This document shows, one piece after another, positions 3,320-39,620 of a stretch of DNA of 43,481 nucleotides. The DNA lies in contig NW_021834983.1 in the NCBI RefSeq assembly GCF_006345805.1, positions 1 through 43,481 of the forward strand, read 5' to 3'. Each line of letters begins with the position of its first letter. Position 1 is the first letter of the stretch. The notes under the pieces were generated by a model. That model ran no database searches and was not told the origin of the DNA. It saw only the letters and a list, made by a program, of their open reading frames with translations. A program made the translations under genes and the position numbers. Source of the stretch: Octopus sinensis. Lineage: Eukaryota.

Positions 3320-3564
3320 TTACATATATATATATATACATGCATTTATACATACATACACATATATATATATATATTATAATATATATATATATATATA
3401 TTAATATATATATATATTATATATATATATTTATATATATATGTATTTTATATATATGTATTATATATATATATTATATATAGAGTATTATTATATATGT
3501 AATATATATATATATAATATAAAATATATATATATATATATACATATATATATACATATACATA

Positions 3565-3648
<84 letters not shown>

Positions 3649-3694
3649 TATACATATGCATATATACATATGCATATATGCATATATATATATA
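3320..3694. repeat. (TA)n-rich microsatellite flanking the Helitron array
   Basis: Direct reading. Confidence 0.95.
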
Positions 3695-5812
3695 CTAGCA
3701 GTATCGCCCGGCGTTGCTCGGGTTTGTAAGGGAAATAACTATATAAGCATTTTTAGAGTGTTATAGCCAAAAAATAGCAAAAAAATGCATTAAAAATTGA
3801 AAAAAAATTAAGGTAATTTTTTTAAAAATCGTTGACACATCGTAGATATCTTAGAGAGTTACTTCCCTTATAGAATAACGAAAAATATGCATTAAAATGG
3901 AAAAATATGATGGTAAATTTTTTTAAATCGTAGACTCATCGTAGACGCGCGCTAATACCAGAAGGGCTCGATATGAATCACGACTATAAGATACCCCGCT
4001 TTGGGTTAAACTACACCGCAAAATGTGGGAGTAGTACGAATCTAAATCGTAGGGAGACAGACACACAACTTCACTCTTATATATAAAGATATAAGCCACG
4101 TAGTTATATACACATACTTTGTTATATACACATTCTTAAAAGAAATGTTATTTGAACACAACATTTACAAAGAATAAATATTTTTGGTTTTTTCTGAACC
4201 CTTCGTTACTATATTTCTGACCAAAATACACCCCTTATGTGTTTCAATTAATTTCTAACTAATCATAAATTTAGTCTGGTTTCATTAAACAACTATAACT
4301 TTTTTATTTATGAATATATTAATCTGATTTTGGAAGATAATTTAGTGAAATGTTCTCAACCAATTCTATACTATAATTTTTGTCACAAGTGACTCTAATT
4401 GCAGGTAGATACAGGTAAATTCAACAAAAATAAAATTATAAAAATTTGTTCAAACATCGCTATAGAAAATGGGTTATTAGCTAATATTCAATTGGGTATA
4501 CAACAAATTTTATGATAGAATTTGTTATTCTGGGTAACTTTCTAATACCCATAATAATATTTATGGCAAAATAGGCCTTAATTTCATTTAAGGTTGTGGG
4601 AAATAACAAACTATCGTTTCTTTCGCTTTGTTTAGGTGAGATCAAATACCACATGGTTTTTTTTTTCAGTCATAGAGTTAGATTTATGAAGGTCTTCAGT
4701 AGAAAATCCTTCGAATTCTGACTCGCTGCTTGATATAATGAAATTCGTATCCATTTTTTGTCAGAATTAAAAATTTTGAAAAACACAATAGGAACAAATT
4801 TCGGAAAAAAAATCTCCCATAATTCACGGAATTAAAATTACACTTCGATTTTTGTACAAACTGACTTAGTTGAACTGTTGACGAAGTATAATACGTTTTC
4901 ACGAATGTTCTAAAGAGATTTAACTCTGATATTCTCATTTAAATATGAATAGGTAAATTCGGGCGGCTTGGTCACATTAACAAAATTTTTTTCGGGCGGT
5001 TTTGTAACGAAAGGGTTTTTAAACGGATGCATACATTTATTAATAACTATATATAAGTGTCGTCTGTTTATACATAAAACCTGTTTCATACTGCAATTAT
5101 ATATACATATATCTATATATAATATTATATAATAAAATATATACAGAGTAAAATAAAAAACCAATTTACCTTTTCTGTATTGTTATTCGACCGTCCGTGT
5201 GTCTTTGCAAATGTGTTGGAATGATAAGTGAGTTGTGTTTTGGCGCCTTTTTTTTACTAATAACAAACACACACGTGTTGTATGTAGTTGTTTGAAACGT
5301 TTGTGTTTGCCACTCTCATATATGTATGTGTATGCGTGTGTGTGAGGAATGACACACACACACTCACGCACGCACACATGTACATCAATGCTTTTATGAG
5401 CGTCATAGAGAGAAACAAATATTACATCGCCATCGCCATAGCCATCGCAATCGCCATCGACATAGCCATCGCCATCGCCATAGCCATCGCCATCGCCATA
5501 GCCATCGCCATCGCATTCTTTTCTACCTGTCAACCACACAGTGAATTAGTTTCAGTTTTCATTGCACACTGTGTGTGTGCGTTTGCGAGTGTGGTGTAAA
5601 CCAGACTAAGAAAAGCATTTGACACACACACCAGAATGTGAGTTTTCTGTAAATTTTGCTTAATTGGAGTTTAAATTTTAAAAACTGGACCTGGCATGAC
5701 GCGATGCATTGTACTATTAAAACTGCTAGTAAATTGTAATTGAAGAAATGCTATATTGTAGATTTGTATAACTCCCAAAGGAGGCAGATAAAATCTGCCT
5801 TTTATAATAAGA
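3695..5812 (-). mobile_element. Helitron unit 0 (2118 bp, unique cargo); contains a complete short Helitron at 3695-4089
   Basis: CTAG/hairpin end at 3695, internal TC-type start near 4089, shared 5' module at about 5568-5812. Confidence 0.7.
5425..5514. repeat. (CATCGC/CATAGC)n hexamer repeat
   Basis: Direct reading. Confidence 0.9.
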
Positions 5813-7129
5813 CTAGCAGCAGTATCGCCCGGCGTTGCTCGGTTTGTAAGGGAAAACTATATAAGCATTTTTAGAGAGTTATAGCCAAAAAATAGCAAAA
5901 AATGCATTAAAAATGGAAAAAAATATGTGGTAAATTTTTTGAAAAATCGTTGACTCATCGTAGACATTTTTAGAGAGTTACTTCCCTATATAATAGCGAA
6001 AAAATGCATTAAAATGGAAAAAAACGATGGTACTTTTTTTTTAAATCGTAGACTCATGTAGACGCTTTCTTAGCCTTTCTGTTTTGGTGTCTTCAAGCCA
6101 TGAAGTCGTGTGTCTAAAAGAACGCTGGTCTCCTTGACAACGCATTACGACGTTGATTTCCTTACACTCCTTCCCCCCACAGGTGAGGTGGGGTGTGAGC
6201 GTGGACGCCAACTCCGCCGCATCGAACACGAAAAATTATGCATTAAAATGGAATAAAAAATGCGTTTAATTATTTTTAAAATCGTAGACTCATCGTAGAC
6301 GCGCGCTAATATTCAGACGGGCTCGATATGAATCACGACTATAAGCTCCCGAATTGGTTAAACTGTACCGCAAAATGTGGGAGTAGTTAGGAATCTAAAT
6401 CGAAGAGGGACAGACACTCACACAACTACAGTTTTATATATATAGATATACATAGCGCAGTAGTGTGGTGAGATATGACAGCAAAGAAAAGCATACATTC
6501 ACTCTCTGCATGCATTAGACTCGGAAAGTTCGTGAGGAACCATTGACCCAATTGCTGACTTTTCCGATAGCACACAGGTGTAATGAATGGTTGAATGACC
6601 AAATCAAGCTTCTCGCTAGTTCCTAACAGTTACGATGATATTTTGTTCCACCAGGTTTTCAGGATGTCCTTGTCGAGTTCTACAGATCTTTCAGGATGAG
6701 GCTCGTCTTCTAGGCTGTAGTTTATGGTCGGGATTTCTGGAACCACCATTGACACTGCCTTACGCTTATTGTCCAATCCCCATATACTGCATTAATATTT
6801 CTTGTACTTGCACAACATTTATATTCTGTTATTTTATATGTTTAGCCTTGAGGTTGTGGCCATGCTGGATCAGTGTGGTGTGTGTGTGTGTGGTGTCTCT
6901 GTCTGTCTGTCTGTATGTATATATGTATATGTATGTGTGTGAACAATAATATTTTCAACAGATGGTGTTGCAAATGTATCTGATTGTTCTCAAGCTTCAA
7001 TACTGTGTGTGTGGTATGTGTGTGTGTGTATGTAGTGTATGTATTATGTATGTATGTGTATGTATATGTATGTATGTATGTAGTGTGTATGTGTATGTAT
7101 GTGTGTGTGTATGTATGTGTGTGTGTATG

Positions 7130-7168
<39 letters not shown>

Positions 7169-7659
7169 ATGTATGTATGTATGTATGTATGTATGTATGT
7201 AGTAGTGTATTATGTATGTATGTATGTGTATGTATGTATGAGTGTATGTTTACTTTATTACTAATTACTCTCTTCCAAGAACATTTTCACTCACTCTTAG
7301 CTCTTAGCTTCCCATACATTTTACTCATGTATCTATCAGCGGCATAGACAGAATACTTCACTTTAGTCTTCCTCAAATCACTCTGTCGCTATTTACTTCA
7401 TTTTATTCGTTGCCCACTGTGTGGTGTGCGTTTGCGTGTGGGGTGAAACCAGACTAAGAAAAGCATTTGACACACACCACCAGAATGTTAGTTTTCTGTA
7501 AATTTTGCTTAATTGGGTTAAATTTTAAAAACTGGACCTGGCATGACGCGATGCATGTACTCTTAAAACTGCTAGGTAAATTGTAATTGAAGAAATCCTA
7601 TATTGTAGATTTGTATAACTCCCAAAGGAGGCAGATAAAATCTGCCTTTTATAATAAGA
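5813..7659 (-). mobile_element. Helitron unit 1 (1847 bp)
   Basis: 3' Helitron module 5813-6446, mariner fragment, microsatellite, spacer, 5' module. Confidence 0.8.
6455..6795 (-). pseudogene. Mariner transposase N-terminal (HTH) fragment, copy 1
   Basis: Homologous to the 10131-10523 ORF region. Confidence 0.75.
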
Positions 7660-8973
7660 CTAGCAGTATCGCCCGGCGTTGCTCGGGTTGTAAGGGAAAT
7701 AACTATATAAGCATTTTTAGAGAGTTATAGCCAAAAAATAGCAAAAAATGCATTAAAATGGAAAAAAATATGATGGTATTTTTTTTTTTAAATCGTTGAC
7801 TCATCGTAGACATTTTTAGAGAGTTACTTCCCTTATATAATAGCGAAAAAATGCATTAAAATGGAAAAAAAAACGATGGTAAATTTTTTTTAAATCGTAG
7901 ACTCATGTAGACGCTTTCTTAGCCATTTCTGTTTTGTGTCTTCAAGCCATGAAGTCGTTGTTCTAAAAGAACACTGGTCTCCTTGACAACGAATTACGAC
8001 GTTGATTTCCTTACACTCCCTTCCCCACAGGTGCAGGTGAGCGTGGACGCCAACTCCGCCGCCATCGACACACGAAAAATTATGCATTAAAATGGAATAA
8101 AAAATGATGTTAAATTATTTTTAAAATCGTAGACTCATCGTAGACGCGCGCTAATATGCAGACGGGTCGATATGAATCACGACTATAAGCTACCCGAATT
8201 TGGTTAAACTGTACCGCAAAATGTGGGAGTAGTTAGGAATCTAAATCGAAGGGGAACAGACACTCACACAACTACAGTTTTATATATATAGATATACATA
8301 GCGCAGTAGTGGTGAGATATGACAGCAGAAAGAAAAGCATATTCACTCTCTGCATGCAATTAGACTCGGAAAGTTCGTGAGGAACCCATTGACCCAATTT
8401 GCTGACTTTTCCGATAGCACACAGGTGTCAATGAATGGTTGAATGACCAAATCCAAGCTTCTCTGCTAGTTCCTCAACAGTTACGATGATATTTTGTTCC
8501 ACCAGGGTTTTCAGGATGTCCTTGTCGAGTTCTACAGATCTTTCAGGATGAGGCTCGTCTTCTAGGCTGTAGTTTATGGCTCGGATTTCTGGAACCACCA
8601 TTGACACTGCCTTACGCTTATTGTCAATCCCCATATACTGCATTAATATTTCTTGCTTTGCACACATTTATATTCTGTTATTCTTTTATATGTTTCAGCC
8701 TTGAGGTTGTGGCCATGCTGGATCAGTGTGTGTGTGTGTGTGTGTGTGTCTATCTGTCTGTCTGTCTGTATGTATATATGTATATGTATGTATGTGAACA
8801 ATAATATTTTCAAGAGATGTGTGCAAAGTATCTGATTGTTCTCAAGCTTCAATACTGTGTGTGTGTGTATGTGTGTGTGTGTATGTATGTATGTATATGT
8901 ATGTATGTATGTATATGTATGTATGTTGTATGTGTGTATGTATGTATGTGGTGTGTGTGTATGTGTGTGTGTA

Positions 8974-9010
<37 letters not shown>

Positions 9011-9511
9011 ATGTGTATGTATGTATGTATGTATGTATGTATGTATGTATGTATGTATTTATGTATGTATGTATGTATGTATGTATGTATGAGTGTATGT
9101 TACTTTATTACTAATTACTCTCTTCCAAGAACATTTTCACTCACTCCTTAGCTCTTAGCTTCCCATACATTTTACTATCATGTATCTATCAGCGGCATAG
9201 ACAGAATACTTTCACTTTAGGCTTCCTCAAATCACTCTGTCGCTATTTACTTTCATTTTATTCGTTGCCCACGTGTGTGTGCGTTGCGTGTGGTGTAAAC
9301 CAGACTAAGAAAAGCATTTGACCCACACACCGGATGTTAGTTTTCTGTTAATTTTGCTTAATTGGAGTTTAAATTTTAAAAACTGGACCTGGCATGACGC
9401 GATGCATTGTACTCTTAAAACTGCTAGGTAAATTGTAATTGAAGAAATCCTATATTGTAGATTTGTATAACTCCCAAAGGAGGCAGATAAAATCTGCCTT
9501 TTATAATAAGA
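7660..9511 (-). mobile_element. Helitron unit 2 (1852 bp)
   Basis: Near-identical to unit 1. Confidence 0.8.
8300..8663 (-). pseudogene. Mariner transposase fragment, copy 2
   Basis: RAINYSLEDEPHPERSVELDKDILKTLVEQNIIVTVEELAEKLGFGHSTIH. Confidence 0.8.
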
Positions 9512-10829
9512 CTAGCAGTATCGCCCGGCGTTGCTCGGGTTTGTAAGGGAAATAACTATATAAGCATTTTTAGAGAGTTATAGCCAAAAAATAGCAAAAA
9601 ATGCATTAAAAATGGAAAAAAATATGATGGTAATTTTTTTTTTAAATCGTTGACTCATCGTAGACATTTTTAGAGAGTTACTTCCCTTATATAATAGCGA
9701 AAAAATGCATTAAAATGGAAAAAAAAACGATGGTAAATTTTTTTTTAAATCGTAGACTCATGTAGACGCTTTCTTAGCCATTTCTGTTTTGGTGTCTTCA
9801 AGCCATGAAGTCGTTGTTCTAAAAGAACACTGGTCTCCTTGACAACGAATTACGACGTTGATTTCCTTACACTCCCTTCCCCCAGGTGCAGGTGTGAGCG
9901 TGGACGCCAACTCCGCCGCCATCGGCGACACACGAAAAATTATGCATTAAAATGGAATAAAAAATGATGTTAAATTATTTTTAAAATCGTAGACTCATCG
10001 TAGACGCGCGCTAATATGCAGACGGCTCGATATGAATCACGACTATAAGCTACCCGAATTTGGTTAAACTGTACGCAAAATGTGGGGGAGTAGTTAGGAA
10101 TCTAATGAAGAGGGACAGACACTCACACAACTACAGTTTTATATAGATAGATATACATAGCGCAGTAGTGGTGAGATATGACAGCAAAGAAAAGCATACA
10201 TTCACTCTCTGCATGCAATTAGACTCGAAGTTCGTGAGGAACCCATTGACCCAATTTGCTGACTTTTCCGATAGCACACAGGTGTCAATGAATGGTTGAA
10301 TGACCAATCCAAGCTTCTCTGCTAGTTCCTCAACAGTTACGATGATATTTTGTTCCACCAGGGTTTTCAGGATGTCCTTGTCGAGTTCTACAGATCTTTC
10401 AGGATGAGGCTCGTCTTCTAGGCTGTAGTTTATGGCTCGGGATTTCTGGAACCACCATTGACACCGCCTTACGCTTATTGTCCAATCCCCATATACTGCA
10501 TTAATATTTCTTGTACTTTGCACACATTTATATTCTGTTATTCTTTTATATGTTTCAGCCTTGAGGTTGTGGCCATGCTGGATCAGTGTGTGTGTTGTGT
10601 GGTGTGTCTATCTGTTTCTGTCTGTATGTATATATGTATATGTATGTATGTGAACAATAATATTTTCAACAGATGTGTTGCAAATGTATCTGATTGTTCT
10701 CAGCTTCAATACTGTGTTGTGTGTATGTGTGTGTGTGTATGTATGTATATGTAATGTATGTATGTATGTATATGAGTATGTATGTATGTGTGTATGTATG
10801 TATGTGTGTGTGTATGTATGTGTGTGTGT

Positions 10830-10869
<40 letters not shown>

Positions 10870-11365
10870 ATGTATGTATGTATGTATGTATGTATGTATG
10901 TATGTATGTATTTATGTATGTATGTATGTATGTATGTATGTATGAGTGTATGTTTACTTTATTACTAATTACTCTCTTCCAAGAACATTTTCACTCACTC
11001 TTAGCTCTTAGCTTCCCATACATTTTACTCATGTATCTATCAGCGGCATAGACAGAATACTTTCACTTTAGGCTTCCTCAAATCACTCTGTCGCTATTTA
11101 CTTTCATTTTATTCGTTGCCCACTGTGTGTGTGCGTTTGCGTGTGGTGTAAACCAGACTAAGAAAAGCATTTGACACACACACCAGAATGTTAGTTTTCT
11201 GTAAATTTTGCTTAATTGGAGTTTAAATTTTAAAAACTGGACCTGGCATGACGCGATGCATTGTACTCTTAAAACTGCTAGGTAAATTGTAATTGAAGAA
11301 ATCCTATATTGTAGATTTGTATAACTCCCAAAGGAGGCAGATAAAATCTGCCTTTTATAATAAGA
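9512..11365 (-). mobile_element. Helitron unit 3 (1854 bp)
   Basis: Near-identical to units 1-2. Confidence 0.8.
10158..10523 (-). pseudogene. Mariner transposase fragment, copy 3
   Basis: RNINAVYGDWTISVRRCQWWFQK...LEDEP..RS.ELD...TVEELAEKL matches Mos1/SETMAR-type HTH domains; WVPHEL-like region in a shifted frame. Confidence 0.85.
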
Positions 11366-13148
11366 CTAGCAGTATCGCCCGGCGTTGCTCGGGTTTGTAA
11401 GGGAAATAACTATATAAGCATTTTTAGAGAGTTATAGCCAAAAAATAGCAAAAAAATGCATTAAAAATGGAAAAAAATATAAGATGGTAATTTTTTTTTA
11501 AATCGTTGACTCATCGTAGACATTTTTAGAGAGTACTTCCCTTATATAATAGCGAAAAAATGCATTAAAATGGAAAAAAAAAAGAGGTAATTTTTTTTTA
11601 AATCGTAGACTCATGTAGCGCTTTCTTAGCCATTCTGTTTGGTGTCTTCAAGCCATGAAGATGAGTCGTTGTTCTAAAAGAACACTGGTCTCCTTGACAG
11701 CATTACGACGTTGATTTCCTTACACTCCCTTCCCCACAGGTGCAGGTGTGAGCGTGGACGCCAACTCCCCCGCCCATCGACACACGAAAAATTATGCATT
11801 AAAATGGAATAAAAAATGATGTAATTATTTTTAAAATCGTAGACTCATCGTAGACGCGCGCTAATATTCAGACGGGCTCGATATGAATCACGACTATAAG
11901 CTACCGAATTTGGTTAAACTGTACCGCAAAATGTGGAGTAGTAGTTAGGAATCTAATCGAAGGGACAGACACTCACAACAACTACAGTTTTATATATATA
12001 GATATACATAGCGCAGTAGTGGTGAGATATGACAGCAAAGAAAAGCATACATTCACTCTCTGCATGCAATTAGACTCGGAAAATTCGTGAGGAACCCATT
12101 GACCCAATTTGCTGACTTTTCCAATAGCACACAGGTCTCAATGAATGGTTGAATGACCAAATCCAAGCTTCTCTGCTAGTTCCTCAACAGTTACGATGAT
12201 ATTTTGTTCCACCAGGGTTTTCAGGATGTCCTTGTCGAGTTCTACAGATCTTCAGGATGAGGCTCGTCTTCTAGGCTGTAGTTTATGGCTCAGGATTTCT
12301 GGAACCACCATTGACACTGCCTTACGCTTATTGTCCAATCCCCATATACTGCATTAATATTTCTTGTACTTTGCACACATTTATATTCTGTTATTCTTTT
12401 ATATGTTTCAGCCTTGAGGTTGTGGCCATGCTGGATCATGTGTGTGTGTGTGTGTGTGTGTCTATCTGTCTGTCTGTCTGTATGTATATATGTATATGTA
12501 TGTGTGTGAACATAATATTTTCAACAGATGTTTGCAAATGTATCTGATTGTTCTCAAGCTTCAATACTGTGTGTGTGGTGTATGTGTGTGTGGTGTATGT
12601 ATGTATGTATATGTTGTATGTATGTATATGTATGTATGTGTGTGTGTATGTATGTGTGTGTGTATGTGTGTGTGTGTATGTTGTATGTATGTATGTATGT
12701 ATGTATGTATGTATGTATGTATGTATGAGTGTATGTTTACTTTATTACTAATTACTCTCTTCCAAGAACATTTTCACTCACTCTTAGCTCTTAGCTTCCC
12801 ATACATTTTACTCATGTATCTATCATCGTCATAGACAGAATACTTTCACTTAGTCTTCCTCAAATCACTCCTGTCCGCTATTTACTTCCATTTCATTCGT
12901 TGCCCACTGTGTGTGTGCGTTTGCGTGTGGTGTAAACCAGACTAAGAAAAGCATTGACACACACACCAGAATGTGAGTTTTCTGTAAATTTTGCTTAATT
13001 GGAGTTTAAATTTTAAAAACTGGACCTGGCATGACGCGATGCATTGTACTCTTAAAAATGCCAGGTAATTGTAATTGAAGAAATCCTATATTGTAGATTT
13101 GTATAACTCCCAAAGGGAGGCAGATAAAATCTGCCTTTTATAATAAGA
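11366..13148 (-). mobile_element. Helitron unit 4 (1783 bp)
   Basis: Same organisation, shorter microsatellite. Confidence 0.8.
12010..12376 (-). pseudogene. Mariner transposase fragment, copy 4
   Basis: Homologous to copies 1-3. Confidence 0.75.
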
Positions 13149-14154
13149 CTTAGCAGTATCGCCCGGCGTTGCTCGGGTTGTAAGGGAAATAACTATATAA
13201 GCATTTTTAGAGAGTTATAGCCAAAAAGTAGCAAAAAAATGCATTAAAAATTGAAAAAAAATAAGGTAAATTTTTCTTTAAATCGTTGACACATCGTAGA
13301 TATTTTTAGAGAGTACTTCCCTTATATAAAAGCGAAAAAAATGCATTAAAATGGAAAAAATGATGGTATTTTTTTTAAATCGTAGACTCATCGTAGACGC
13401 GCGCTAATACCCAGAGGGCTCGTTGTTATTCTGGGTAACTTTCTGTAAAATATTAAAATTTTGTTCAAACATCGCTATAGAAAATGGGTTATTAGCTAAT
13501 ATTCAATTGGGTATACAACAAAATTTACAATGAATTTGTTATTCTGGGTAACTTTCTGATACCCATAATAATATTTATGGCAAAATAGGCCTTAATTTCA
13601 TTTAAGATTGTGGGAATAACAAACTATCCTTTCTTTCGCTTTGTTTACGTTTAGCGTAATGATTCAAATAGGCTCATTCGAAAAAGTAAATAGAAATAGT
13701 CTAAGCTTTACTCTTCTGGGAAAGTCTGTGGCTTGGTCCAGTTTCTTCAGAAAACTCACCGAAGAAACAGTTTTTTTTAATTTTCACTCCATTCAGGTAC
13801 CAATTCGTTTCTTTATCGCTGTCGGATTCACTGTTTTCACTTTAATAGCTGCAAACTTGCAAGACAAAGGAGGAGAAGGGTGATAGCTTCAATGAAACAA
13901 TTCGCTCCCTTTGTGTGTGTTGCGTTTGCGTGTGGTGTAAACCAGACTAAGAAAAGCGTTTGACACACACACCAGAATGTGAGTTTTCTGTAAATTTGCT
14001 TTTATTGGAGTTTAATTTTAAAAACTGGACCTGGCATGACGCGATGCATTGTACTCTTAAAATTGCTAGGTAAATTGTAATTGAAGAAATCCTATATTGT
14101 AGATTTGTATAACTCCCAAAGGGAGGCATAAAATCTGCCTTTTATAATAAGAGA
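13149..14154 (-). mobile_element. Helitron unit 5 (about 1.0 kb, different cargo)
   Basis: Unit-0-type 3' module truncated near 13420, a block shared with unit 0, unique cargo, then the 5' module with the outer terminus. Confidence 0.7.
13655..13845 (-). pseudogene. Probable piggyBac-type transposase N-terminal fragment
   Basis: SENSESDSDKETNW...FGEFSEETGPSHRLSQKSKA, then (1-nt frameshift) LDYFYLLFRMSLFESL, resembling the F.E..GP....LDYF.LFF motif of piggyBac/PGBD proteins. Confidence 0.45.
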
Positions 14155-14250
14155 TATATATATAATATATATATATATATATTATATACATACACATATA
14201 TATATATTATATACACATATATATAGATATATACATACATTCATACATAC

Positions 14251-14490: not shown

Positions 14491-15540
14491 GTGTTGGGTT
14501 TGCCCAAAAGTTCGGTTTTTCCGTTCGGTTTTTCAAGCAAAAATTAAACAAGTTTTAAGTACAAATCGATTTATTCAATCAACGATTTAATTACCGTTTC
14601 GTTCCAATATCTTGAGTCATCTTTTAGGCACATCTATCATTCTCTGCTCAAAGAATTTCCTGCATTTACTGGCGGAAAACTAGTAGAAGGTCAGTCCGTT
14701 CAAAGAATTTTGAAGAGACTGAAATAGGTGGAAATCTGAAGGTCCGAGTTCGGGCGAATATTGAGGGTACTGCAAAACTTCCCAGCCAAGCCCCAGTAAA
14801 TTCTGCCGCGTTTTCAAAGAAGTACGCGGTCAGGCATTGTCGAGATGAAAGACGATGCCCTTACGATTAGCAAGTACTGAACGTTTCTGGTGGGTCGCTG
14901 CGTGTAATTTGTCCCAGCTGAACACCGTACACATCCGAATCGATGGTCCTGTCCGTGGGAAGATGCTCATAAAAGACAACATCCTTCCAATTCCACCAAA
15001 TTGAAAGCATGACATTCTTTGTGTGAAGTCCTGCTTTGGAAGCTGTTTGTAGTGGTACATCGCATTTCTTCCACGATCGTTTGTGCTTCACATTGTCATA
15101 AACGATTCATTTTTCATTCTCTGCTACCATTCTCTTAAAAAATGGATTGTTTCCTTCACGTTTCCGCAACGAATCACAGACAGAAATCTGTTGAACCAGG
15201 ATAGCTTGATTCAATCGATGTGAGACCCAAACATCGAGCCTGCTGACCTGACCAAGTTGATGCAGTTAGTTTTGAATATAGGACCACCCTTGTTGTACAA
15301 TGGGAAATGATGTCACTGTTAATCTCAGTTGGGCTGTCAGAGCGAGGTGCAACTTGAACTGAAGAATTTCCCACTCGAATTCTTGATAACCTCTTCCAGA
15401 ACACACATTCCGTAACAGCATATTCTCCGTGCACAGTGCAAACCTCGCTGCAGGTTTCTGCCGCTTTCTTACCATTTTTAAAATAAAAAAAGTATGAGGT
15501 ATCGATTAATGCTCGTTTTGGTTTTCCATTCTCAGAGTGA
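14491..15540 (-). mobile_element. Decayed mariner (DD34D-type) transposon, 5' TIR lost
   Basis: ATG at 15529 (MENQNEH); fragments KNGKKAAETC, LDVWVSHRL, IVYDNVKHKRSW, KNVMLSIWW, FHLDNA, YSPELGPSDFHLF; TIR-like GTTGGGTTTGCCCAAAAG near 14493. Confidence 0.9.
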
Positions 15541-15548
15541 TCCGAAAC

Positions 15549-16248
15549 GTACTGGGGTCGATCTAATCGACTGGCCACCTCCCCCAAAATTTCAGGCCTT
15601 GTACCTAGAGTAGAAAAGATTATTTAAGGCGGCAAGTTGGCAGAAACGTTAGCAGGCCGGGCGAAATGCTTAGCAGTATTTCGTCTGCCGTTACGTTCTG
15701 AGTTCAAATTCCGCCGAGGTCGACTTTGCCTTTCATCCTTTCGGGGTCGATAAATTAAGTACCAGTTGTGTACTGGGGTCGATATAATCGACTTAATCCA
15801 TTTGTCTGTCTTTGTCCTCTCTGTGTTTAGCCCCTTGTGGGTAGTAAAGAAATAGGTATTTCGTCCGTCGTTACATTCTGAGTTCAAATTCTGCCGAGGT
15901 CGACTTTGCCTTTCATCCTTTCGGGGTCGATAAATTATATACCAATTGCGTACTGGAGTCGATTAATCGACTGGCTCCCCTCTCTCAAAATGTTGGGCCT
16001 TGTGTCTAGAGTAGAAAAGATTATTTAAGGTGGCGAGGAGGCAGAAACGTTAGCAGGCCGGGTGAAATACCGCTAAGCATTTCGCTTTGCGGTATTTATC
16101 CCGTCGCTACGTTCTCAGTTCAAATTCTGCCGACGTCGACTTTGCCTTTCATCCTTTCGGGGTCGATACATTAAGTACTGGGGTCGATCTAATCGACTGG
16201 CTCCCCTCTCCAAAAATTTCGGGCGTTGTGCCTAGAGTAGAAAAGGAT
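15549..16248 (+). mobile_element. Tandem array of SINE family 1 monomers
   Basis: Repeated GAGTTCAAATTC B box and CGAGGTCGACTTTGCCTTTCATCCTTTCGGGGTCGAT core (Deu/Nin/Meta-like central domain, assignment uncertain); heads at 15626 and 16027. Confidence 0.85.
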
Positions 16249-18296: not shown

Positions 18297-18526
18297 TTTC
18301 TTTACTACCCACAAGGGGCTAAACACAGAGGGGACAAACAAGGACAGACAAAGGGATTAAGTCGATTACATCGACCCCAGTGCGTAACTGGTACTTAATT
18401 TATCGACCCCGAAAGGATGAAAGGCAAAGTCGACCTCGGCGGAATTTGAACTCGGAACGTAACGACAGACGAAATACGGCTACGCATTTCGCCCGGCGTG
18501 CTAACGTTTCTGCCAGCTCGCCGCCT
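18297..18526 (-). mobile_element. Full SINE family 1 monomer with 17-bp TSD
   Basis: TGGTAAATATATATATA at 18280-18296 and 18527-18543; head AGGCGGCGAGCTGGCAGAAACGTTAGC. Confidence 0.9.
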
Positions 18527-19643
18527 TGGTAAATATATATATACTTACAGTCCGGATATAGCCAAACCATTCGGCGATGGAGTAGTCACTACTGATGAAC
18601 CAGTAATTTTACAAGCGAAACTAATTTAGTCTATTGATCTAGCTTCGCTTATGGGGCGGTTATCTTCCCTGTCAGTGCATGAAAATGTGCTTCTTGCAGC
18701 TGTAAGTGTTTCGACGCGTATTTCTAACAAAATAGGTACCACCCAACACTCTTAGTCATATAATTTTTCCTTTTTGGTTTTATTTTGCTTTTAGCTGCCT
18801 TCCTTATCATATATATACAGTGGGGGGAAATAAATATTCGTAATTGTCAAAATTCTTTATTTATTTAATTTCTAATGAACATAAATGGGATATACCAATA
18901 CTATATTAGCATACACATGCATAAATTAAGAATATGCAAAAGAAACTAATAAATTATAGTAACTATATATATATTTCCTGCATATTCTACACTTTCTGGG
19001 CAAAAGCTACAAATGTACATAATAAATATTATTATAGACTTTCGCTTCAAAAGCTCCTCAAGAACAATATTTCTTGTAGAGACATGAGGAAGCACCAACA
19101 CATGATGGTCTTCTGAATTTCCAGTCTGTAATTTTAGATTATTTGTTACTTGTACTTCAGCTGAAATCAAGGAATTTTACATGTCTGCAGTGTGACAAAT
19201 AATTGGCTTAAGTGGAAAACATGAAATGTCTCTGTAACCTGAATATAACAAGTAGTATTGAAATATATTGGAATATATGAAGCAGAATAATTAATAGCGA
19301 AATAAGTGCAAATACAAATATATAGAGCGTAGTAGATATATATCGATGACAGCGTTTTATATATATATTGATTAGATTTGCCAATGAGAAAAAGGGAGAA
19401 ATTTAATTTGATAAAAGCTTTAGTTGAGCATTATGAGATGAAAAAGACAGCAGAGTGAGGTTTCGAATACAAAATAAACAGAGTGACTCCAGCCCACGTC
19501 GAATAATTTAGAGGTTGTGACGGATGATTTATAAAGTAAATCATATAAAATGGAACGAATTCAACAGCATCAAATGGTGAAGTGTAAATCACGAAAAAGA
19601 GTATATATATATATATATATATACAAAATTATGTAGCGTATTA

Positions 19644-19903
19644 TCTATATATATAAAACTGAGAATGTGTGTCTGTCTGTCTGTCTGTGTGAATCTCTAA
19701 AACTTGAGAACTACACAACCAATTTCATTCAAATTTTACACATGCCTTACTTAGGGTCCATGGAGTGTCAGGGGCACAAAAAATCTTTAACTTCTTGCAT
19801 AGGGCGAGCCCACAAGCAATATCATATCTTCTCCACTATTTCAGTATTACGTGTTAAAAGTGAAACAAAAACATCTCTCTATTGGATGTATATGAATGTA
19901 TAT

Positions 19904-26304: not shown

Positions 26305-28146
26305 ATACACAGAGGGGATAAATACAAATGTAGAGCTTTTCTTTTCGAAAATGAAGAAGAAAAAGGGAAAAAATGAGAAAAAAAAGGTAAAATTCCGATC
26401 AGAAGGGATCGGGGAAATAAAAGAAAAAGAAAATAAAAGACGATCAAAAGGGATCGTGTATCACAGAAGAATTTTGAAAATGTAAAAAGCAAGATTAGGT
26501 TTATCCGTGGAAAGAAAAGCCTACGGAAAAGACTACGGTAGCCTCAGGCAGGGAGGAAATAAACACATGAGAGCAAAGTGCTCTCTCTCTTTTACGATTT
26601 ACAGGATCATGCTCAAAGTGGTTTCGTCACTCGCACGCACCATCTTTGCTACATTCACCTACCTTCTTTTGAAACTTTCAGGAGACAAAACCTGCCTCTC
26701 TATTCTTACCTTCCTTTTCAAGTGGTACTTAAAAAAGTTGATGAGCAATTGGCCAGAGAGGTAAGTGTTTGTCTCTAATCCTTTCGCTCAAGTCCACCAC
26801 ACACATTCTTTCATTGTGGCCACCAGTACGATGAAGACTGCCTTGCCTTCCCGGTTAAGGGAAGGGGGCGGAGCAATTCTCAGGATAGACTCGGCCGATA
26901 GGCGGATTCGTCCCACACGTGACAGCAGCCGTTCGGCATAAGTCCACAGGTCGGAAATGGTTGGACACTGCACGAGCGTGTGCAAAATGGTTTCGTCGCT
27001 CTGACCGCACCTCGGGCAAGTCGGTCCGGTGTGTCTCGAACCGTGTCTGTAGAGCTTATCCCGAACAGGTAAAGCTTCTCGATAGCACTGCCAGGCCAGG
27101 GATCTTTGATGATTGTCTATAGGTCCCAGCCCGAAAGTTGTCCTGAACAGGCGGGTCAGGTGTTTCTCGTCGACGCCCAGACTCTGCCCGAGTTCGTCGT
27201 CGCACCTCCCCTCCACTAATCCTCTATAGAATGCCTTTGTTGTGATGGAGTCGCACAAGTTTGGTCCCGGACGGCAGAGTTGCTTGAGAGCAACGCGACA
27301 CTCGCGGTGCCGTTCGCCTAGCCTCGGTCTCTGTTTGATCCATGACTGCAGTTCGGCCAAGGAGACGAGCTGCGAGAAAGCGCGCCGCACAAATGGCAAC
27401 CACACTTGTTCACCGTCGTCTATGAAGCGCCGGAGATGTCGCAGTCTCAACGCATGTCTGCGCATCATCAACCATGGCATGCCTAGCCCTCTATTTAGCA
27501 GATATTGACAGCAAATGGATCGCCTAACTATCGGAACGCTTCCCTTCCACAGGAAGCGGGAGAGTATGCGTTCCAGTTTGGTGATGGTAGGGTCAGGACA
27601 AGGCACGACGGTCAGACGGTACTCGATGACGGATGCGATGTATGCGTTCGCCACCTCCGCCCGACCTTATAGGGATAGCTTCCTCTCGGCCCATTGCTGG
27701 GTGAGAGTGGCAACCCTAGTCGTTGTTTCGCCCCAGTTCTTCTCCATTTGGAGGTGCGGACCTAATCAAACTCCGAGAAATTTAACCGGTCCGTCGGTCC
27801 AGCGTCCCACGATGGAGACGCTGTTGGACGGCATGGGCTTGCTTCTCCAGGTGCCGAGCTGCAAGCCCACTGACTTTACCCGGTTAATTTTTGCTCCCGT
27901 TACCGCTTCGTATTCTTTTAGTTTCTTGCCGACCAGGTCGATGTGCTCGTAGCTCGACACTATGACGGTGACGTCGTCCGCGTATGCAGACACGCTCCTC
28001 GCGTATCCCAGCTCTCGCGGGATACCTGTCGGCGTCGCCAGCTTCCGCAGTAGTGGCTCAAGAGCCAATACATACAGAAGCGACGAGAGGGAGCATCCTT
28101 GACGAACCGAACGCATGATGTGAAATGGTCTGGATAGATGACCATT

Positions 28147-28148
<2 letters not shown>
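26305..28148 (-). mobile_element. 5'-truncated L1/Tx1-clade LINE
   Basis: RT motifs RQGCSLS, YADDVTV, KINRVKS, KFLGV; zinc knuckle CPRCGQSDETILHTLVQC; T-rich 3' UTR. The 3' boundary is approximate. Confidence 0.85.
26599..28148 (-). pseudogene. LINE ORF2 remnant (RT C-terminal half plus zf-RVT-like knuckle), single frame with four internal stops
   Basis: ORFs 27766-28287 and 26788-27654 share a frame that continues to TAA at 26599; stops near 27766, 27668, 26788 and 26660. Confidence 0.85.
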
Positions 28149-28239
<91 letters not shown>

Positions 28240-28240
28240 T
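28149..28240. repeat. (GATA)n(GACA)n at the LINE 5' junction
   Basis: Direct reading. Confidence 0.95.
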
Positions 28241-28259
28241 GCTGTGTGTGTGTGTGTGT

Positions 28260-28455
28260 CTGCAGTTGTTTGTAGTTTGTCACTCAACTGCTTGACAACG
28301 AGTGTTAGCCTATTTACGTCACCTTAAGGTGGCGGTTCGCCAAAAGATGGCGATAAAATTTAGAATACGTTCTGGTAAGTACGAGACAAAAACCCATTAA
28401 GTGGTGCTGCAGCATAACCGCAGTACAAGTGACTGAAACAAGTAAAAGATAAAAA
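28260..28455 (+). mobile_element. SINE family 2 body/tail (right half of the interrupted copy, diverged)
   Basis: GCTTGACAAC..TTTACGTC..GCGGTTCGCCAAAAGA..GTGACTGAAACAAGTAAAAGATAAAA. Confidence 0.65.
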
Positions 28456-29789: not shown

Positions 29790-30329
29790 GGATCTTTTCC
29801 TTTTGATCGGCAGTTTTCAACACAATTTCTCTGTTATGTTTACGTTCGGAAAGCGTGTATATAAAATTATAGAATTATTTCGTTTGTTAATTGTTTAAAT
29901 TATTTTCCATTGCTTTCGTTTTTTTTTTTCTTAAGCAATGGAAAATAGTTTAAACAAGACATGTGTATCTCAAAACAAAAACAAAACGAATAATTTTAGA
30001 CACACGCGTAACAATTAAGAAAAAAAAAACGAAAGGCTAAAATTTAGGGTTAGGGTTAGGGTTAGTGTAGGGTTAGGGTTAGGGTTAGGGTCAGTGACAG
30101 GATGTTGTCTCAGTTTTAGACGCAGCAAATGATTTTAGCTAAATAGAGGCCATCAATTGGTTAAAATTCGAAAAATTAAACTACGTTAAACTTACAAATT
30201 ACAATTTTCTCAAGAAAGCCAAGAGAAAAAAATGTTTTATTTTGACACATTCTACCAGTATACGAAGTTTAAAAGTGTTTAGTTAACTAGAAAGTGTGTT
30301 GAAAACTGCCGTTCAAAAGGAAAAGATCC
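29790..30329. mobile_element. GGATC-terminal MITE with TTAGGG array, 8-bp TSD CAGTATTC
   Basis: 28-bp TIRs with 1 mismatch; TSD 29782-89 and 30330-37; TTAGGG array 30044-30090. Confidence 0.9.
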
Positions 30330-30864
30330 CAGTATTCAGTGTTGTTGCGCAACAACCACTTTTAAGTGGGGATAAGCATTACTGTTTATTATTTTTTAGG
30401 GTTAAGCTTTGGATTAGGGTTAATGTTTAGGTAAGGGTTAGAATTAGCCTTTATGTATGAGTTATGGTTAGGTTTAATATTACAAGTATATTCGCCAAAA
30501 AATGTCTTGAAGGTGGTGCCCCAGCATGGCCGCAGTCTGAAAACTGAAACAAGTAAAAGATAAAAGATATGGTCACACACATAGACACAACAACCAATGC
30601 CTGTAAACTCAATAATAAACGCACCAAAAATAGCAACAACAACGACGACAACAACAACAACAACAGCAAGAACTGGCCAGCAAGAACTCCTCAAAGAGAA
30701 GCTGTAATGGTTTATCTTCTTCATCAAAATAATTAAAGACCAATCTCAGGAATTTGGTATTTTCCTGTCGTAAAGTAAATCAGTTGAAACAGCTTTAATC
30801 TATGATTACTCAGAACGCAACAGGAAGTGAGCAAGTGAGCTATAAGAGTGGGTAACGCACGCGC

Positions 30865-32112: not shown

Positions 32113-32882
32113 TTTTTTTATCTAGTTTCAGCTCACAAGCTGTGGCCATGCTGGGGCACCGCCATTTGGTGTTGCTACATGATATTACTTCACGAATGCT
32201 TTTTAGCAATTGCCATTTGGTGCATGAGAGAGTTCGATGCAGCTGTCCTCATCTGCACCTCCTGTCGTGAAGTTGGTTCATCTGGGACACCTGACAAGAA
32301 GAGATCCAGTTTTATTTTAAAGACATCTGCATCCACCCCATGCAGGTCTCTTAGGTTCTTCGGGAGCATATTGAAGAGCTGTGGGCCTCGGAAGCCCAGG
32401 CTATCACAGTATCTTGTCCTACATCTTGATGGCAAATTTGAAGTCCTTGGCACTATGCAGTGGCGCCCAGTTCTGGTATTTGTGTAACTCTCGATGTCAA
32501 AGTTTGGGACAAGTCCTTCTAGGATCTTCCAGATGTATATTATGGCATATCTTTCTCGCCTACGCTCTAAGGAATAGAGTCTCAATCTCTTGAGTCTTTC
32601 CCAGTAGCTTATATGCTGCACAGAGGCTATCTTCTTCGTGTAGCTTCGTTGGATCGCCTCAAGTTCTGTGATTAACTTGACACTGGATGGTGACCATAGC
32701 TGAGAGCAATAGTCAAAGTGGCTTAGGACAAGTGTCCTCCAGAGGACCATCATGGTTTCCTGGTCTCTTGTTCTAAAGGTTCTAAGAATCCATCCGGTCA
32801 GCCGCCTACATTTCATTGCCAATTTAGCAACATGCACATGAAAGGTTGCATCATCACTCATGTAAATACCCAGGTCGCTTAT
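32113..32882 (-). mobile_element. 5'-truncated CR1-group LINE with intact 3' end
   Basis: DLGIY motif at the truncation point, ORF C-terminus, 3' UTR ending GGCGGTGCCCCAGCATGGCCACAGCTTGTGAGCTGAAACTAGATAAAAAAA. Confidence 0.85.
32190..32861 (-). pseudogene. Uninterrupted C-terminal 223 aa of a CR1-group ORF2
   Basis: LDYCS..WSP-like (FDYCSQLWSP), LEAIQRSYTK, YWERLKRLRLYSLERRRER, FNMLP, FKIKLD motifs. Confidence 0.85.
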
Positions 32883-34017: not shown

Positions 34018-34700
34018 AAGGCACATAGCCAAGTGGTTAGAGCAGCGGATTCGCGGTCGAGGGATCGCGAGTTCGAATCTCAAACCGGGTGATGTGTGTG
34101 TGTTTATGAGCAAAACACCTAAGTTCCACGCCGCGGATCTTTTCGGTTTGAACGGCAGTTTTTTCTAGCGGTGTCATATGAAATTGTCACCCATAATTAT
34201 GACCCTAGAATCGATCTATTGCATTTCAATCTCTTTTAGGGTTAGGGGTGGGGGGAAGGGTATCTTTTTTTCTTCAGAAATGTAAATAAACCCAATCTGT
34301 TTCTTAAACGAGGGACATATTCATACGGCACAGAATGTTTTTTAACTCAATAGACGTATTTAATTGGTTGATATTGCAAAAATTGAAGAAAAAAAAACAA
34401 CAAATATCTTACAAACAATAGAATTTTCTCAAGAAAGCCAAGAGAAAAAGATGTTTTATGAACACATTCTACCAGTATACGAAGTTTAAAAGTGTTTAGT
34501 TACCTAGAAATTATGTTAAAAACTGCCGGTCAAACCGAAAAGATCCCACGCCGCTCCGGCAGAAGATAATGGCGAACTTCTGCTAACTCTTTCATCACAA
34601 CTTTCTCTCACTCTTTCCTCCTGCATCTTCCAGCTCACCTGCAACGGACCGGCGTCCCGTCCAAGTGGAGAACCCATACGCCAAGGAAACCGAGAAACCT
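34018..34700 (+). mobile_element. V-domain-like SINE (family 4) interrupted by a MITE
   Basis: Head GGCACATAGCCAAGTGGTTAG..GAGTTCGAATC; resumes after 34546; GGACCGGCGTCCCGTCCA..GGAAACCG tail. Confidence 0.75.
34135..34546. mobile_element. GGATC-terminal MITE, 8-bp TSD CACGCCGC
   Basis: TIR GGATCTTTTCGGTTTGAACGGCAGTTTT; TSD 34127-34 and 34547-54; short TTAGGG tract at about 34235-34260. Confidence 0.9.
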
Positions 34701-38039: not shown

Positions 38040-38460
38040 AAGGCGGCGAGCTGGCAGAATTGTTATTTAATCGTCGATTAAGTAAGTACCAGTTACGCAC
38101 TGTGGTCGATATAATCGGCTTAATCTATGTGTTTGTCCTTGTCTGTCCTCTCTGTGTTTAGCCCCTTGTGGGTAGTAAAGAAATAGGTATTTCGTCTGCC
38201 GTTACGTTCTGAGTTCAAATTCCGCCGAGGTAGACTTTGCCTTTCATCCTTTCGGGATCGATAAATTAAGTACCAGTTGAGTACTGGGGTCGATGTAATC
38301 GACTATCGCCCTCCCCAATTTCTTCCGGCAGTTTACGTTCTGAGTTGAAATCCTTTCGGGATCGATAAAATAAATATCAATTGAGCTCTGAATTCGATCT
38401 AATTGACTCATTCCTTTTCTCTCAAAATTGCTGGCTTTGTGCCTAAATTTGAAACCATTA
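38040..38460 (+). mobile_element. SINE family 1 dimer/multimer, preceded by (TTC)n(ATT)n
   Basis: Head AGGCGGCGAGCTGGCAGAA; internal junction GTAGTAAAGAAATA|GGTATTTCGTC at 38185/86. Confidence 0.8.
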
Positions 38461-38970: not shown

Positions 38971-39408
38971 GGATCTTTTCGGTTTGAACGGCAGTTTTTT
39001 CTAGCGGTGTCATATGAAATTGTCACCCATAATTATGACCCTAGTATCGATCTATTGCATTTCAATCTATTTTAGGCTTAGGGTTAGTTAGGGTTAGGGT
39101 TAGGGTTAGGGGTGGGATTAAGGGTATCTTTTTTTCTTCACAAATGTAAATAAACCCAATCTGTTTCTTAAACGAGGGACATATTCATACGGCACAGAAT
39201 GTTGTTTACCTCAATGGACGTCAGTGATTGGTTGAAATTGCAGAAATTGAAGAAAAAAACAGTAAATATCTTACAAACTATAGAATTTTCTCAATAAAGC
39301 CAAGAGAAAAAGATGTTTTATAAACACATTCTACCAGTATACGAAGTTTAAAATTTTTTAGTTACCTAGAAATTATGTTAAAAACTGCCGTTCAAACCGA
39401 AAAGATCC
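38971..39408. mobile_element. GGATC-terminal MITE with TTAGGG array
   Basis: Perfect 28-bp TIRs; TSD AACAGAAT/AACAGAAG (7 of 8); TTAGGG tract at about 39071-39124. Confidence 0.9.
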
Positions 39409-39620
39409 AACAGAAGTAAAAACCAAGCCACATCAATCTGTTCTTTCTAGAAAATTCTTCACCATTATTCGATGCATTAACACTCCTATATGTTTAGTTT
39501 AGATTTAAAATGACTAATAAATAATTAATTAGAAACAAGTAGGGCTGCTAATTAAATCCGTCAAAAAATTAGTAACCTTCATCCTAAAATGTCTATAGAT
39601 AGTAGACTGCAATGTAGAAA

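What the first reader, a model, noticed from the sequence alone, without database searches (positions are those of the whole stretch)
3695..14154. Heteromeric Helitron concatemer: six units, three cargoes, CTAG|TC junctions
Seen: one array with single outer A|TC and CTAG|T ends, both embedded in (TA)n. Internal junctions join CTAG directly to TCTTATT with no host DNA; one reads CTTAG on the plus strand, and internal 5' ends are 2 nt shorter than the outer TCTCTTATT. Order is X'-Y-Y-Y-Y-X on the minus strand. Known: head-to-tail junctions are the signature of Helitron rolling-circle intermediates. Inference: different family members were chained in one array, either by template switching or repeated insertion at element termini, possibly an incipient 1.85-kb satellite.
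Basis: partly seen in the sequence, partly recalled or inferred. Interest (0 to 1): 0.8.

Follow-up and report, generated by a model that had tools for sequence, protein, structure and literature searches.

The report
Mixed head-to-tail Helitron transposon array
Six non-autonomous Helitron transposons of three cargo types sit end to end with no host DNA between them inside one (TA)n microsatellite; it is a clean example of arrangements already described in bat and maize, not a new kind of element.

Summary
On the minus strand, 14154 to 3695 holds six complete units (1006, 1783, 1854, 1852, 1847 and 2118 bp). Each starts with TC and ends with a GC-rich hairpin plus CTAG. The array is bounded by A|TC and CTAG|T inside (TA)n. 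All five internal joins abut CTAG directly on TCTTATT. One reads CTAAG, and one unit ends CTGCTGCTAG.

The order is X'-Y-Y-Y-Y-X. Y carries a mariner HTH_48 pseudogene piece and microsatellites. X' and X share a piggyBac-like piece and diagnostic 3' variants that the Y units lack.

These are non-autonomous canonical Helitrons. Homomeric head-to-tail Helitron arrays are already published (bat, Drosophila Y, plants, Xenopus). So is a heteromeric CTAG|TC pair with different cargo (maize AF466202).

My best reading has two parts. The two heterologous joins arose by insertion aimed at a resident terminus, because host A plus the element's 5' T re-creates the AT target. The four Y units have one origin, by rolling-circle read-through or unequal exchange.

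Differences between Y units are almost all private and mostly 1-bp indels, unlike other repeats in the window. This points to unpolished assembly consensus, so copy number and small junction variants need spanning reads.

No other copies could be retrieved, so the route of formation stays inferred.

Verdict: new member of a known kind, modest interest.

The parts
14155..14240 (.). (TA)n microsatellite flank on the 5' side of the array; the host A at 14155 precedes the first TC
   Evidence: TRF row 14154-14237, period 2; sequence read
13149..14154 (-). Unit U1 (X'), 1006 bp. Its 5' end is TCTCTTATT, its 5' hairpin is broken and its 3' end reads CTAAG. Its cargo is about 250 bp of unique sequence plus a ~205-bp piggyBac-like piece (13446-13650) shared with U6.
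   Evidence: weak DDE_Tnp_1_7 match on the homologous U6 piece
11366..13148 (-). Unit U2 (Y), 1783 bp, with a microsatellite block about 70 bp shorter than in the other Y units
9512..11365 (-). Unit U3 (Y), 1854 bp. It contains a 5' hairpin at 11335-11353 and a mariner HTH_48 pseudogene fragment (about 10234-10519; ORF 10131-10523).
7660..9511 (-). Unit U4 (Y), 1852 bp, the closest unit to U3 (96.5% identity)
5813..7659 (-). Unit U5 (Y), 1847 bp, with the most private 1-bp deletions; its 3' end is CTGCTGCTAG
3695..5812 (-). Unit U6 (X), 2118 bp. Its cargo includes a (GCGATG)n hexamer array, a piggyBac-like piece (4431-4637) and a ~225-bp block shared with Y. Its 3' hairpin lies at 3707-3722 and CTAG ends at 3695.
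3324..3694 (.). (TA)n microsatellite flank on the 3' side; the host T at 3694 follows CTAG
   Evidence: TRF row 3324-3694, 191 copies
11351..11369 (-). Example of an internal RTS-LTS junction, CTAG|TCTTATTATAAAAGG. The same motif occurs at 5798-5816, 7645-7663 and 9497-9515, and in variant form at 13134-13152.

Best explanation
This is a compound head-to-tail array of six non-autonomous canonical Helitrons in one (TA)n microsatellite.

Shown by the sequence:
- Every unit is a complete element. Each has a 5' TC, about 255 bp of common left end, cargo, about 255 bp of common right end with two ~100-bp subrepeats, a GC hairpin and CTAG.
- The units abut terminus to terminus.
- Two subfamilies are present. 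The X type (U1, U6) has a piggyBac-like cargo piece and its own 3' diagnostic bases. The Y type (U2-U5) has a mariner fragment and microsatellites.

Inferred formation:
1. An X element inserted into an AT of the (TA)n.
2. The heterologous joins (X'|Y and Y|X) were made by insertions aimed at a resident terminus. The host A plus the first T of a resident element re-creates the AT target. It is also exactly the bond that the Rep tyrosine nicks at a left end or at an RTS-LTS junction. An incoming strand joined there gives CTAG|TC with no host base.
3. The four Y units share one origin. Either the 3' terminator was bypassed during rolling-circle replication of a Y circle and a multimer integrated, or one or two Y copies were amplified later by unequal exchange between the ~255-bp common ends.

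My confidence that these are Helitrons arranged as described is about 0.9. My confidence in this particular route is about 0.5.
For: Termini, junctions and flanks:
- 5 junction matches against 0 expected.
- The 3' hairpin CCCGAGC-AAC-GCCGGG, 12 nt from the end, is present in all units.
- The 5' hairpin has z = -3.0.

Common ends and distinct cargo:
- Pairwise BLAST shows common ends and different cargo.
- Y cargo matches HTH_48 at E = 2e-6.

Subfamilies:
- U1 and U6 share 3' diagnostic bases (ATATC, GTG, CAA). All four Y units have ATGTC, GAG and CCA instead. X' and X are therefore one subfamily, distinct from Y, and no unit is chimeric.

Single origin of Y:
- Outside the microsatellite block, substitutions are private: 20, 7, 16 and 27 in U2-U5. 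Only 2 are shared.

Literature:
- Helraiser joins TC precisely to CTAG in circles and cleaves that junction precisely on the plus strand (PMC4778049; PMC5876387).
- Maize AF466202 has two different Helitrons head to tail with a G/T junction. This was explained by insertion at the AT formed by host A and the resident 5' T, and was supported by inbred lines carrying one or both elements (PMC2267711).
- Homomeric arrays have been attributed to rolling-circle replication.

Inference on targeting:
- The flanking (TA)n offers roughly 230 alternative AT sites. Untargeted re-insertion would usually leave (TA)n spacers, and none is seen at 5 of 5 joins.
Against: - No other copy of the family could be retrieved. 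The window has none. Two metagenome scans and two viral scans found none. Exact-protein look-ups failed. Solo X, X' or Y units, empty sites and an autonomous Rep/Hel partner are therefore all unobserved.
- The A and T flanks are uninformative inside (TA)n.
- The 3' hairpin is small. Its energy is not distinguishable from shuffles (z = -0.28) and it shows no covariation.
- Private substitution counts differ among Y units (7 to 27). This does not fit a simple simultaneous birth unless the counts are mostly consensus errors.
- Terminus-targeted insertion has not been shown experimentally for any Helitron transposase, as far as the papers read here go.
- The order of events cannot be read from this one allele.
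Confidence: 0.6

Rival explanations
1. The array is one rolling-circle or template-switch product. A single replication event ran over several family members, or over a heteromeric circle, and the finished X'-Y4-X concatemer integrated once into an AT of the (TA)n.
For: There is a single pair of outer ends, A|TC and CTAG|T. All units have the same orientation. The junctions are identical to the circle junction made by Helraiser. Terminator bypass is documented.
Against: It needs a pre-existing heteromeric template, so it only moves the origin of the heterologous joins elsewhere. Switching within the shared ~255-bp ends should give chimeric ends, yet each unit's 3' region matches its own cargo type. 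No second copy of the composite was found, although almost nothing could be searched.
Confidence: 0.12
2. All six units were added by independent consecutive insertions, each at the 5' A|T boundary or at an existing junction. No concatemer or in-situ amplification was involved.
For: The maize precedent for two elements. The Metarhizium three-copy case was discussed with the same alternative. U2 differs from U3-U5 at a 5' site where it agrees with U1 and U6 (CTCAC against CTAAC), and it has a shorter microsatellite.
Against: It needs five hits on one dinucleotide, all in the same orientation. The Y units have almost no shared variants (2 sites). That is expected for one origin or a very young homogeneous family, but not for draws from a diversified family.
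Confidence: 0.15
3. The assembly is partly wrong. The number or order of the 1.85-kb units, and small junction variants such as CTAAG, CTGCTGCTAG and the extra TC, come from long-read consensus or repeat resolution.
For: Y-Y comparisons show more gap openings than mismatches, from 16:36 up to 41:61 mismatches:gaps. Five other dispersed repeat pairs in the same window show about 8 mismatches per gap. The private indels are mostly 1-bp deletions, about half of them in homopolymers.
Against: The units differ in microsatellite length and carry a 3-nt duplication. Three cargo types are placed consistently between unique flanks. A 10.5-kb array is within ordinary long-read length. The core finding, heterologous CTAG|TC joins, does not depend on the exact Y count.
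Confidence: 0.1
4. The region is not transposon-driven. It is an ordinary segmental tandem duplication or young satellite whose unit boundaries only resemble Helitron ends.
For: There are four near-identical 1.85-kb units. No Rep/Hel gene or dispersed copy was seen.
Against: Units with unrelated interiors share exactly the same first ~255 and last ~255 bp. The array starts exactly at TC and stops exactly at CTAG, with a subterminal hairpin and A/T flanks. Tandem duplication does not explain three cargo types with common termini.
Confidence: 0.03

Closest known systems
Adjacent head-to-tail Helitrons No.1 and No.2 in the maize r1 region (AF466202; Du et al. 2008, PMC2267711)
   Same: Two different Helitrons with different cargo are joined CTAG|TC (a G/T junction) with no host base. 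The proposed cause is a second insertion into the AT formed by host A and the resident 5' T.
   Different: The maize case has two units, supported by inbred lines carrying one or both elements. Here there are six units, two heterologous joins and a homomeric block of four, and no population data.
Helibat tandem arrays in Myotis lucifugus (Pritham and Feschotte 2007), and Helitron-1_DPe arrays on the large D. pseudoobscura Y (PMC9248874)
   Same: [quoted passage not shown]
   Different: Those arrays are described as repeats of one element. This array mixes subfamilies.
Tandem arrays of truncated centromeric Helitrons in plants (Xiong, Dooner and Du 2016, as summarised in PMC12628747)
   Same: Helitron-derived tandem repeats explained by aberrant rolling-circle replication and integration of a concatemer.
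   Different: The plant arrays have many 5' ends, a single 3' end and truncated units. Here every unit keeps both termini.
Helraiser circle junction (PMC4778049, PMC5876387)
   Same: The same chemistry and sequence logic: 5' TC joined precisely to CTAG 3', and that junction cleaved precisely by the transposase.
   Different: Those junctions are episomal, experimental and from a single element. Here they are chromosomal and join different elements. The family here is unrelated in sequence and its transposase is unknown.
DINE-1 / HINE-type non-autonomous Helitrons and Helentrons with internal tandem repeats
   Same: Short non-autonomous elements with conserved ends, internal ~100-bp subrepeats and microsatellites. 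They are a proposed source of satellite DNA.
   Different: In those cases the satellite grows from repeats inside the element. Here the whole element is the repeat unit. The termini here are canonical Helitron (TC/CTAG, A|T), not Helentron.

Membership tests
Canonical Helitron (Helitron1 type), non-autonomous | 5' terminus TC | tested here: met
   All six units start TC(TC)TTATT.
Canonical Helitron (Helitron1 type), non-autonomous | 3' terminus CTRR (CTAG) | tested here: met
   Five of six units end in exactly CTAG. U1 reads CTAAG, possibly a consensus error.
Canonical Helitron (Helitron1 type), non-autonomous | GC-rich hairpin about 10-12 nt upstream of the 3' end | tested here: met
   CCCGAGC-AAC-GCCGGG forms a 6-bp stem with one bulge, 12 nt from the end, in all units. 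It is weak: -4.5 kcal/mol, context z = -0.28, no covariation.
Canonical Helitron (Helitron1 type), non-autonomous | Insertion between host A and T without target-site duplication | tested here: inconclusive
   The outer flanks are A|TC and CTAG|T with no duplication. In a (TA)n context these bases are expected anyway, and no empty site is available.
Canonical Helitron (Helitron1 type), non-autonomous | No terminal inverted repeats | tested here: met
   TCTTATTATAAAAGG compared with the reverse complement of the 3' end, CTAGCAGTATCGCCC, shows no complementarity (read).
Canonical Helitron (Helitron1 type), non-autonomous | Dispersed copies sharing termini but differing in internal sequence (evidence of mobility) | tested here: inconclusive
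   Three internal types share the same termini within the array. No copy outside the array could be retrieved.
Canonical Helitron (Helitron1 type), non-autonomous | Autonomous partner encoding Rep/Hel with the same termini | not testable with these tools
   No Rep or helicase ORF is present in the window.
Helentron / Helitron2 | Short terminal inverted repeats and insertion between T and T | tested here: not met
   There are no inverted termini and the flanks are A and T.
Rolling-circle concatemer (homomeric Helitron tandem array) | Repeats of one element with precise RTS-LTS junctions | tested here: met
   This holds for U2-U5 only: 90-96.5% gapped identity, private differences and CTAG|TC junctions. 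It does not hold for the whole array, which mixes subfamilies.
Satellite DNA | Long homogeneous tandem array, usually at many loci or in long blocks | tested here: not met
   There are only four Y copies at one locus and no other copy in 43 kb.

The most novel reading that the evidence does not exclude
Helitron transposases may actively use a resident left end, or a chromosomal RTS-LTS junction, as a preferred integration site. They would join the 3' CTAG-OH of one element in trans to the tyrosine-linked 5' TC of another. Different family members would then be chained into composite arrays with several starts and stops, which could be re-mobilised in new combinations. This would be a cargo-shuffling route distinct from terminator bypass.
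Probability: 0.3. Interest if true: 0.55.

Novelty: new member of a known kind. Interest (0 to 1): 0.3.

Why it matters
The locus holds both known kinds of Helitron head-to-tail join side by side: homomeric (Y|Y) and heteromeric (X'|Y, Y|X). It sits in a microsatellite that offered hundreds of alternative AT targets, yet no spacer is present at any join. That makes it a compact natural test case for two questions. One is whether Helitron insertion is drawn to resident termini. The other is how whole-element tandem repeats begin. It does not change what is known about Helitrons. Its practical value is as a query design (last 50 nt plus first 50 nt, in all subfamily combinations) for a genome-wide census in the source species. 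It also warns that tandem Helitron blocks can remain unpolished in long-read assemblies.

Tried and rejected
- External copies. Exact scans of the JGI metagenome contigs with the 3' 22-mer and the 5' 25-mer, and of IMG/VR with both, gave 0 hits.
- Homologue search. A search with the Y mariner ORF gave three JGI proteins at 68-75% identity. Their contigs share only the mariner piece (86-88% nucleotide identity) and carry no Helitron ends.
- Exact-protein look-ups of two window ORFs found nothing.
- Organism. It could not be identified. The reverse-transcriptase ORF's best named relatives are crustacean proteins at 45-50% identity, and an ENA hit was uninformative.
- Rfam. No family matched anywhere in the window, so no small-RNA cargo is evident.
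- Pfam on the remaining cargo ORFs found nothing above threshold. The piggyBac assignment rests on a sub-threshold match (E = 0.009) plus motif reading.
- Capture of the Y mariner piece from the neighbouring mariner remnant (14500-15590) was considered and rejected, because there is no nucleotide or protein similarity.
- A biological cause for the indel excess, such as error-prone rolling-circle synthesis, was considered and rejected as quantitatively implausible.
- Dating the units from their divergence was rejected because the differences look like consensus errors.
Full report
**What is there**

Reading the minus strand from 14400 to 3300 and searching both strands for the end motifs gives six 5' ends (TCTTATTATAAAAGGCAGATTTTAT) and six 3' ends (...CAACGCCGGGCGATACTGCTAG). 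All lie on the minus strand and none lies elsewhere in the 43.5-kb window.

The units are U1 14154-13149 (1006 bp), U2 13148-11366 (1783), U3 11365-9512 (1854), U4 9511-7660 (1852), U5 7659-5813 (1847) and U6 5812-3695 (2118).

The array begins ...TATATATA|TCTCTTATT and ends ...CTGCTAG|TATATATA. TRF reports (AT)n at 3324-3694 (about 191 copies) and at 14154-14237.

The junction 19-mer CTAGTCTTATTATAAAAGG occurs four times exactly and once with two mismatches, against none in 100 shuffles. No host base lies between units.

Variants:
- The U1|U2 junction reads CTAAG|TC.
- U5 ends CTGCTGCTAG.
- The outer 5' end has an extra TC.

**Anatomy of the units**

All six units share about 255 bp at the 5' end and about 255 bp at the 3' end, at 90-96% identity.

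- The 3' common part holds two ~100-bp subrepeats (TRF periods 99-103). It also holds a small GC-rich hairpin, CCCGAGC-AAC-GCCGGG, that ends 12 nt before the terminus.
- The 5' part has an 8-bp-stem hairpin, AGGCAGAT-TTT-ATCTGCCT, 12 nt from the TC (z = -3.0). This hairpin is intact in U2-U6 and broken in U1.
- The Y units (U2-U5) carry a (TACA)n/(CA)n block and a fragment of a mariner transposase gene with stops and frameshifts. That fragment matches Pfam HTH_48 at E = 2e-6, above threshold.
- U6 and U1 share a ~205-bp piece whose translation (LNEIKAYFAINIIMGIRKLPRI) matches the start of the piggyBac DDE_Tnp_1_7 domain only weakly (E = 0.009, below threshold). Otherwise their interiors differ.
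- U6 and Y share a further ~225-bp block upstream of the 3' common part.
- No other cargo ORF matched Pfam, and no Rfam family matched.

'Three cargoes' is therefore correct, with partial sharing between them.

**Relationships among the units**

In the 3' common region, U1 and U6 share diagnostic bases (ATATC, GTG, CAA). All four Y units have ATGTC, GAG and CCA instead. X' and X thus belong to one subfamily that is distinct from Y, and each unit's end matches its own cargo. No unit is chimeric.

Among the four Y units, outside the microsatellite block, substitutions are private (20, 7, 16 and 27 for U2-U5) with only two shared sites, U3+U4 against U2+U5. One 5' site groups U3-U5 against U2, U1 and U6. 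The Y units therefore trace to a single sequence. Beyond that the data are too thin to order them.

**A caveat on sequence quality**

Y-Y alignments have more gap openings than mismatches, from 16:36 up to 41:61 mismatches:gaps per 1.85 kb. The private indels are mostly 1-bp deletions, and about half sit in homopolymers.

Five other dispersed repeat pairs in the same window show the usual pattern of about eight mismatches per gap: 24:2, 29:3, 13:1, 16:2 and 16:3.

The indel excess is thus confined to the array. I read it as unpolished long-read consensus in a tandem block where short reads cannot be placed. This is an inference. It has three consequences:
- The true Y units may be nearly identical, which would make the array young.
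- Divergence cannot be used for dating.
- Single-base junction variants such as CTAAG may not be real.

**What it is**

Every sequence-level hallmark of a canonical Helitron that can be tested here is met:
- a 5' TC;
- a 3' CTAG;
- a subterminal 3' hairpin;
- no terminal inverted repeats;
- A and T flanks without duplication;
- several internal variants sharing the same termini.

Two points are weak. The A/T flanks are uninformative inside (TA)n. The 3' hairpin is too small to stand out from shuffles (z = -0.28).

There is no Rep/Hel ORF in the window, so the units are non-autonomous. The Helentron/Helitron2 features (inverted termini, T|T target) are not met.

**How it probably formed**

The literature already covers both kinds of join.

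Homomeric head-to-tail arrays:
- They are reported in the bat, on the D. pseudoobscura Y chromosome, in plants and in Xenopus (2-7 copies, monomers up to 1996 nt).
- They are attributed to rolling-circle replication.

Heteromeric joins:
- Du et al. 2008 describe two different maize Helitrons, with different cargo, joined CTAG|TC.
- They point out that host A plus the resident element's 5' T is itself a canonical AT target, so a second insertion there leaves no host base. Inbred lines carrying one or both elements support two separate events.
- The Fusarium survey discusses the same two alternatives for three tandem copies in Metarhizium.

Mechanism:
- Helraiser experiments show that the transposase joins TC precisely to CTAG and cleaves that junction precisely on the plus strand.

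On this basis I infer two things.
- The two heterologous joins arose by insertion aimed at a resident terminus, either the A|TC bond or an existing RTS-LTS junction.
- The Y block has one origin, either a multimer made by terminator bypass on a circle or later unequal exchange between the common ends.

Exact abutment at five of five joins needs explaining, because the surrounding (TA)n offers roughly 230 other AT sites. Untargeted re-insertion would usually leave (TA)n spacers. This argument for targeting or concatemer origin is my inference, not a measurement.

**What could not be done**

No other copy of this family was accessible:
- The window holds none.
- Exact scans of the metagenome and viral collections with either end found nothing.
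- Relatives of the Y mariner ORF lie on contigs without Helitron ends.
- Exact-protein look-ups failed.

The source organism was not identified. The window is extremely rich in microsatellites (113 TRF rows; 8-9% perfect SSR). A reverse-transcriptase ORF has its best named relatives in crustaceans at only 45-50% identity.

Solo units, empty sites, recurrence of heterologous junctions and the autonomous partner therefore remain untested. The order of events is not known.

**Verdict**

The phenomenon is a new instance of known kinds (homomeric Helitron arrays plus heteromeric G/T junctions), so interest is modest.

The most novel reading still open is that Helitron transposases preferentially integrate at resident termini and so build re-mobilisable heteromeric composites. 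That reading can be tested with the existing Helraiser system and by a junction census in the source genome.

Noticed in passing
window 3695-14154 compared with 15560-39510: The indel excess is confined to the Helitron array. Y-Y alignments have more gap openings than mismatches, from 16:36 up to 41:61 mismatches:gaps. Five other repeat pairs in the window have about 8 mismatches per gap. This suggests an unpolished tandem block rather than assembly-wide noise.
   Followed up: partly
window 11335-11353 (-) and the equivalent positions in U2-U6; U1 14120-14142: An 8-bp-stem hairpin, AGGCAGAT-TTT-ATCTGCCT, lies 12 nt inside the 5' end (z = -3.0). It is intact in the five internal units and broken by a 2-nt loss in the outermost unit, which also carries the extra 5' TC.
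   Followed up: partly
window 14500-15590 (-): A degenerate mariner-like element (HTH_48, E = 7.5e-6) lies directly beside the array. It has no nucleotide or protein similarity to the mariner fragment carried by the Y units.
   Followed up: yes
window 15621-15963, 18338-18527, 38132-38294: A SINE-like repeat of about 180-230 bp is present as a tandem dimer, an inverted copy and a distant copy, at 89-93% identity.
   Followed up: no
window 30044-30332, 34236-34549, 39072-39411: A repeat of about 320-400 bp is present in three copies. Two of them are immediately preceded by short TTAGGG runs (30044-30091 and 39072-39111).
   Followed up: no
window 26788-28287 (-) and 32190-32861 (-): Fragments of non-LTR retrotransposons are present (RVT_1 and zf-RVT, and a reverse-transcriptase C-terminal ORF). 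The best named relatives are crustacean proteins at 45-50% identity, so the source species seems absent from the protein collection.
   Followed up: partly
window 19616-19681 (+): A 40-60-nt stretch (tatatataaaactg...tgtgtctgtctg) weakly resembles the block shared by Y and U6, and it starts in the same way after a (TA) run. Its meaning is unknown.
   Followed up: no
whole window: Microsatellite density is very high: 113 TRF rows and 8-9% of bases in perfect 1-6-nt repeats, including many (TA)n, (AC)n, (ATAG)n and (AAT)n tracts.
   Followed up: no
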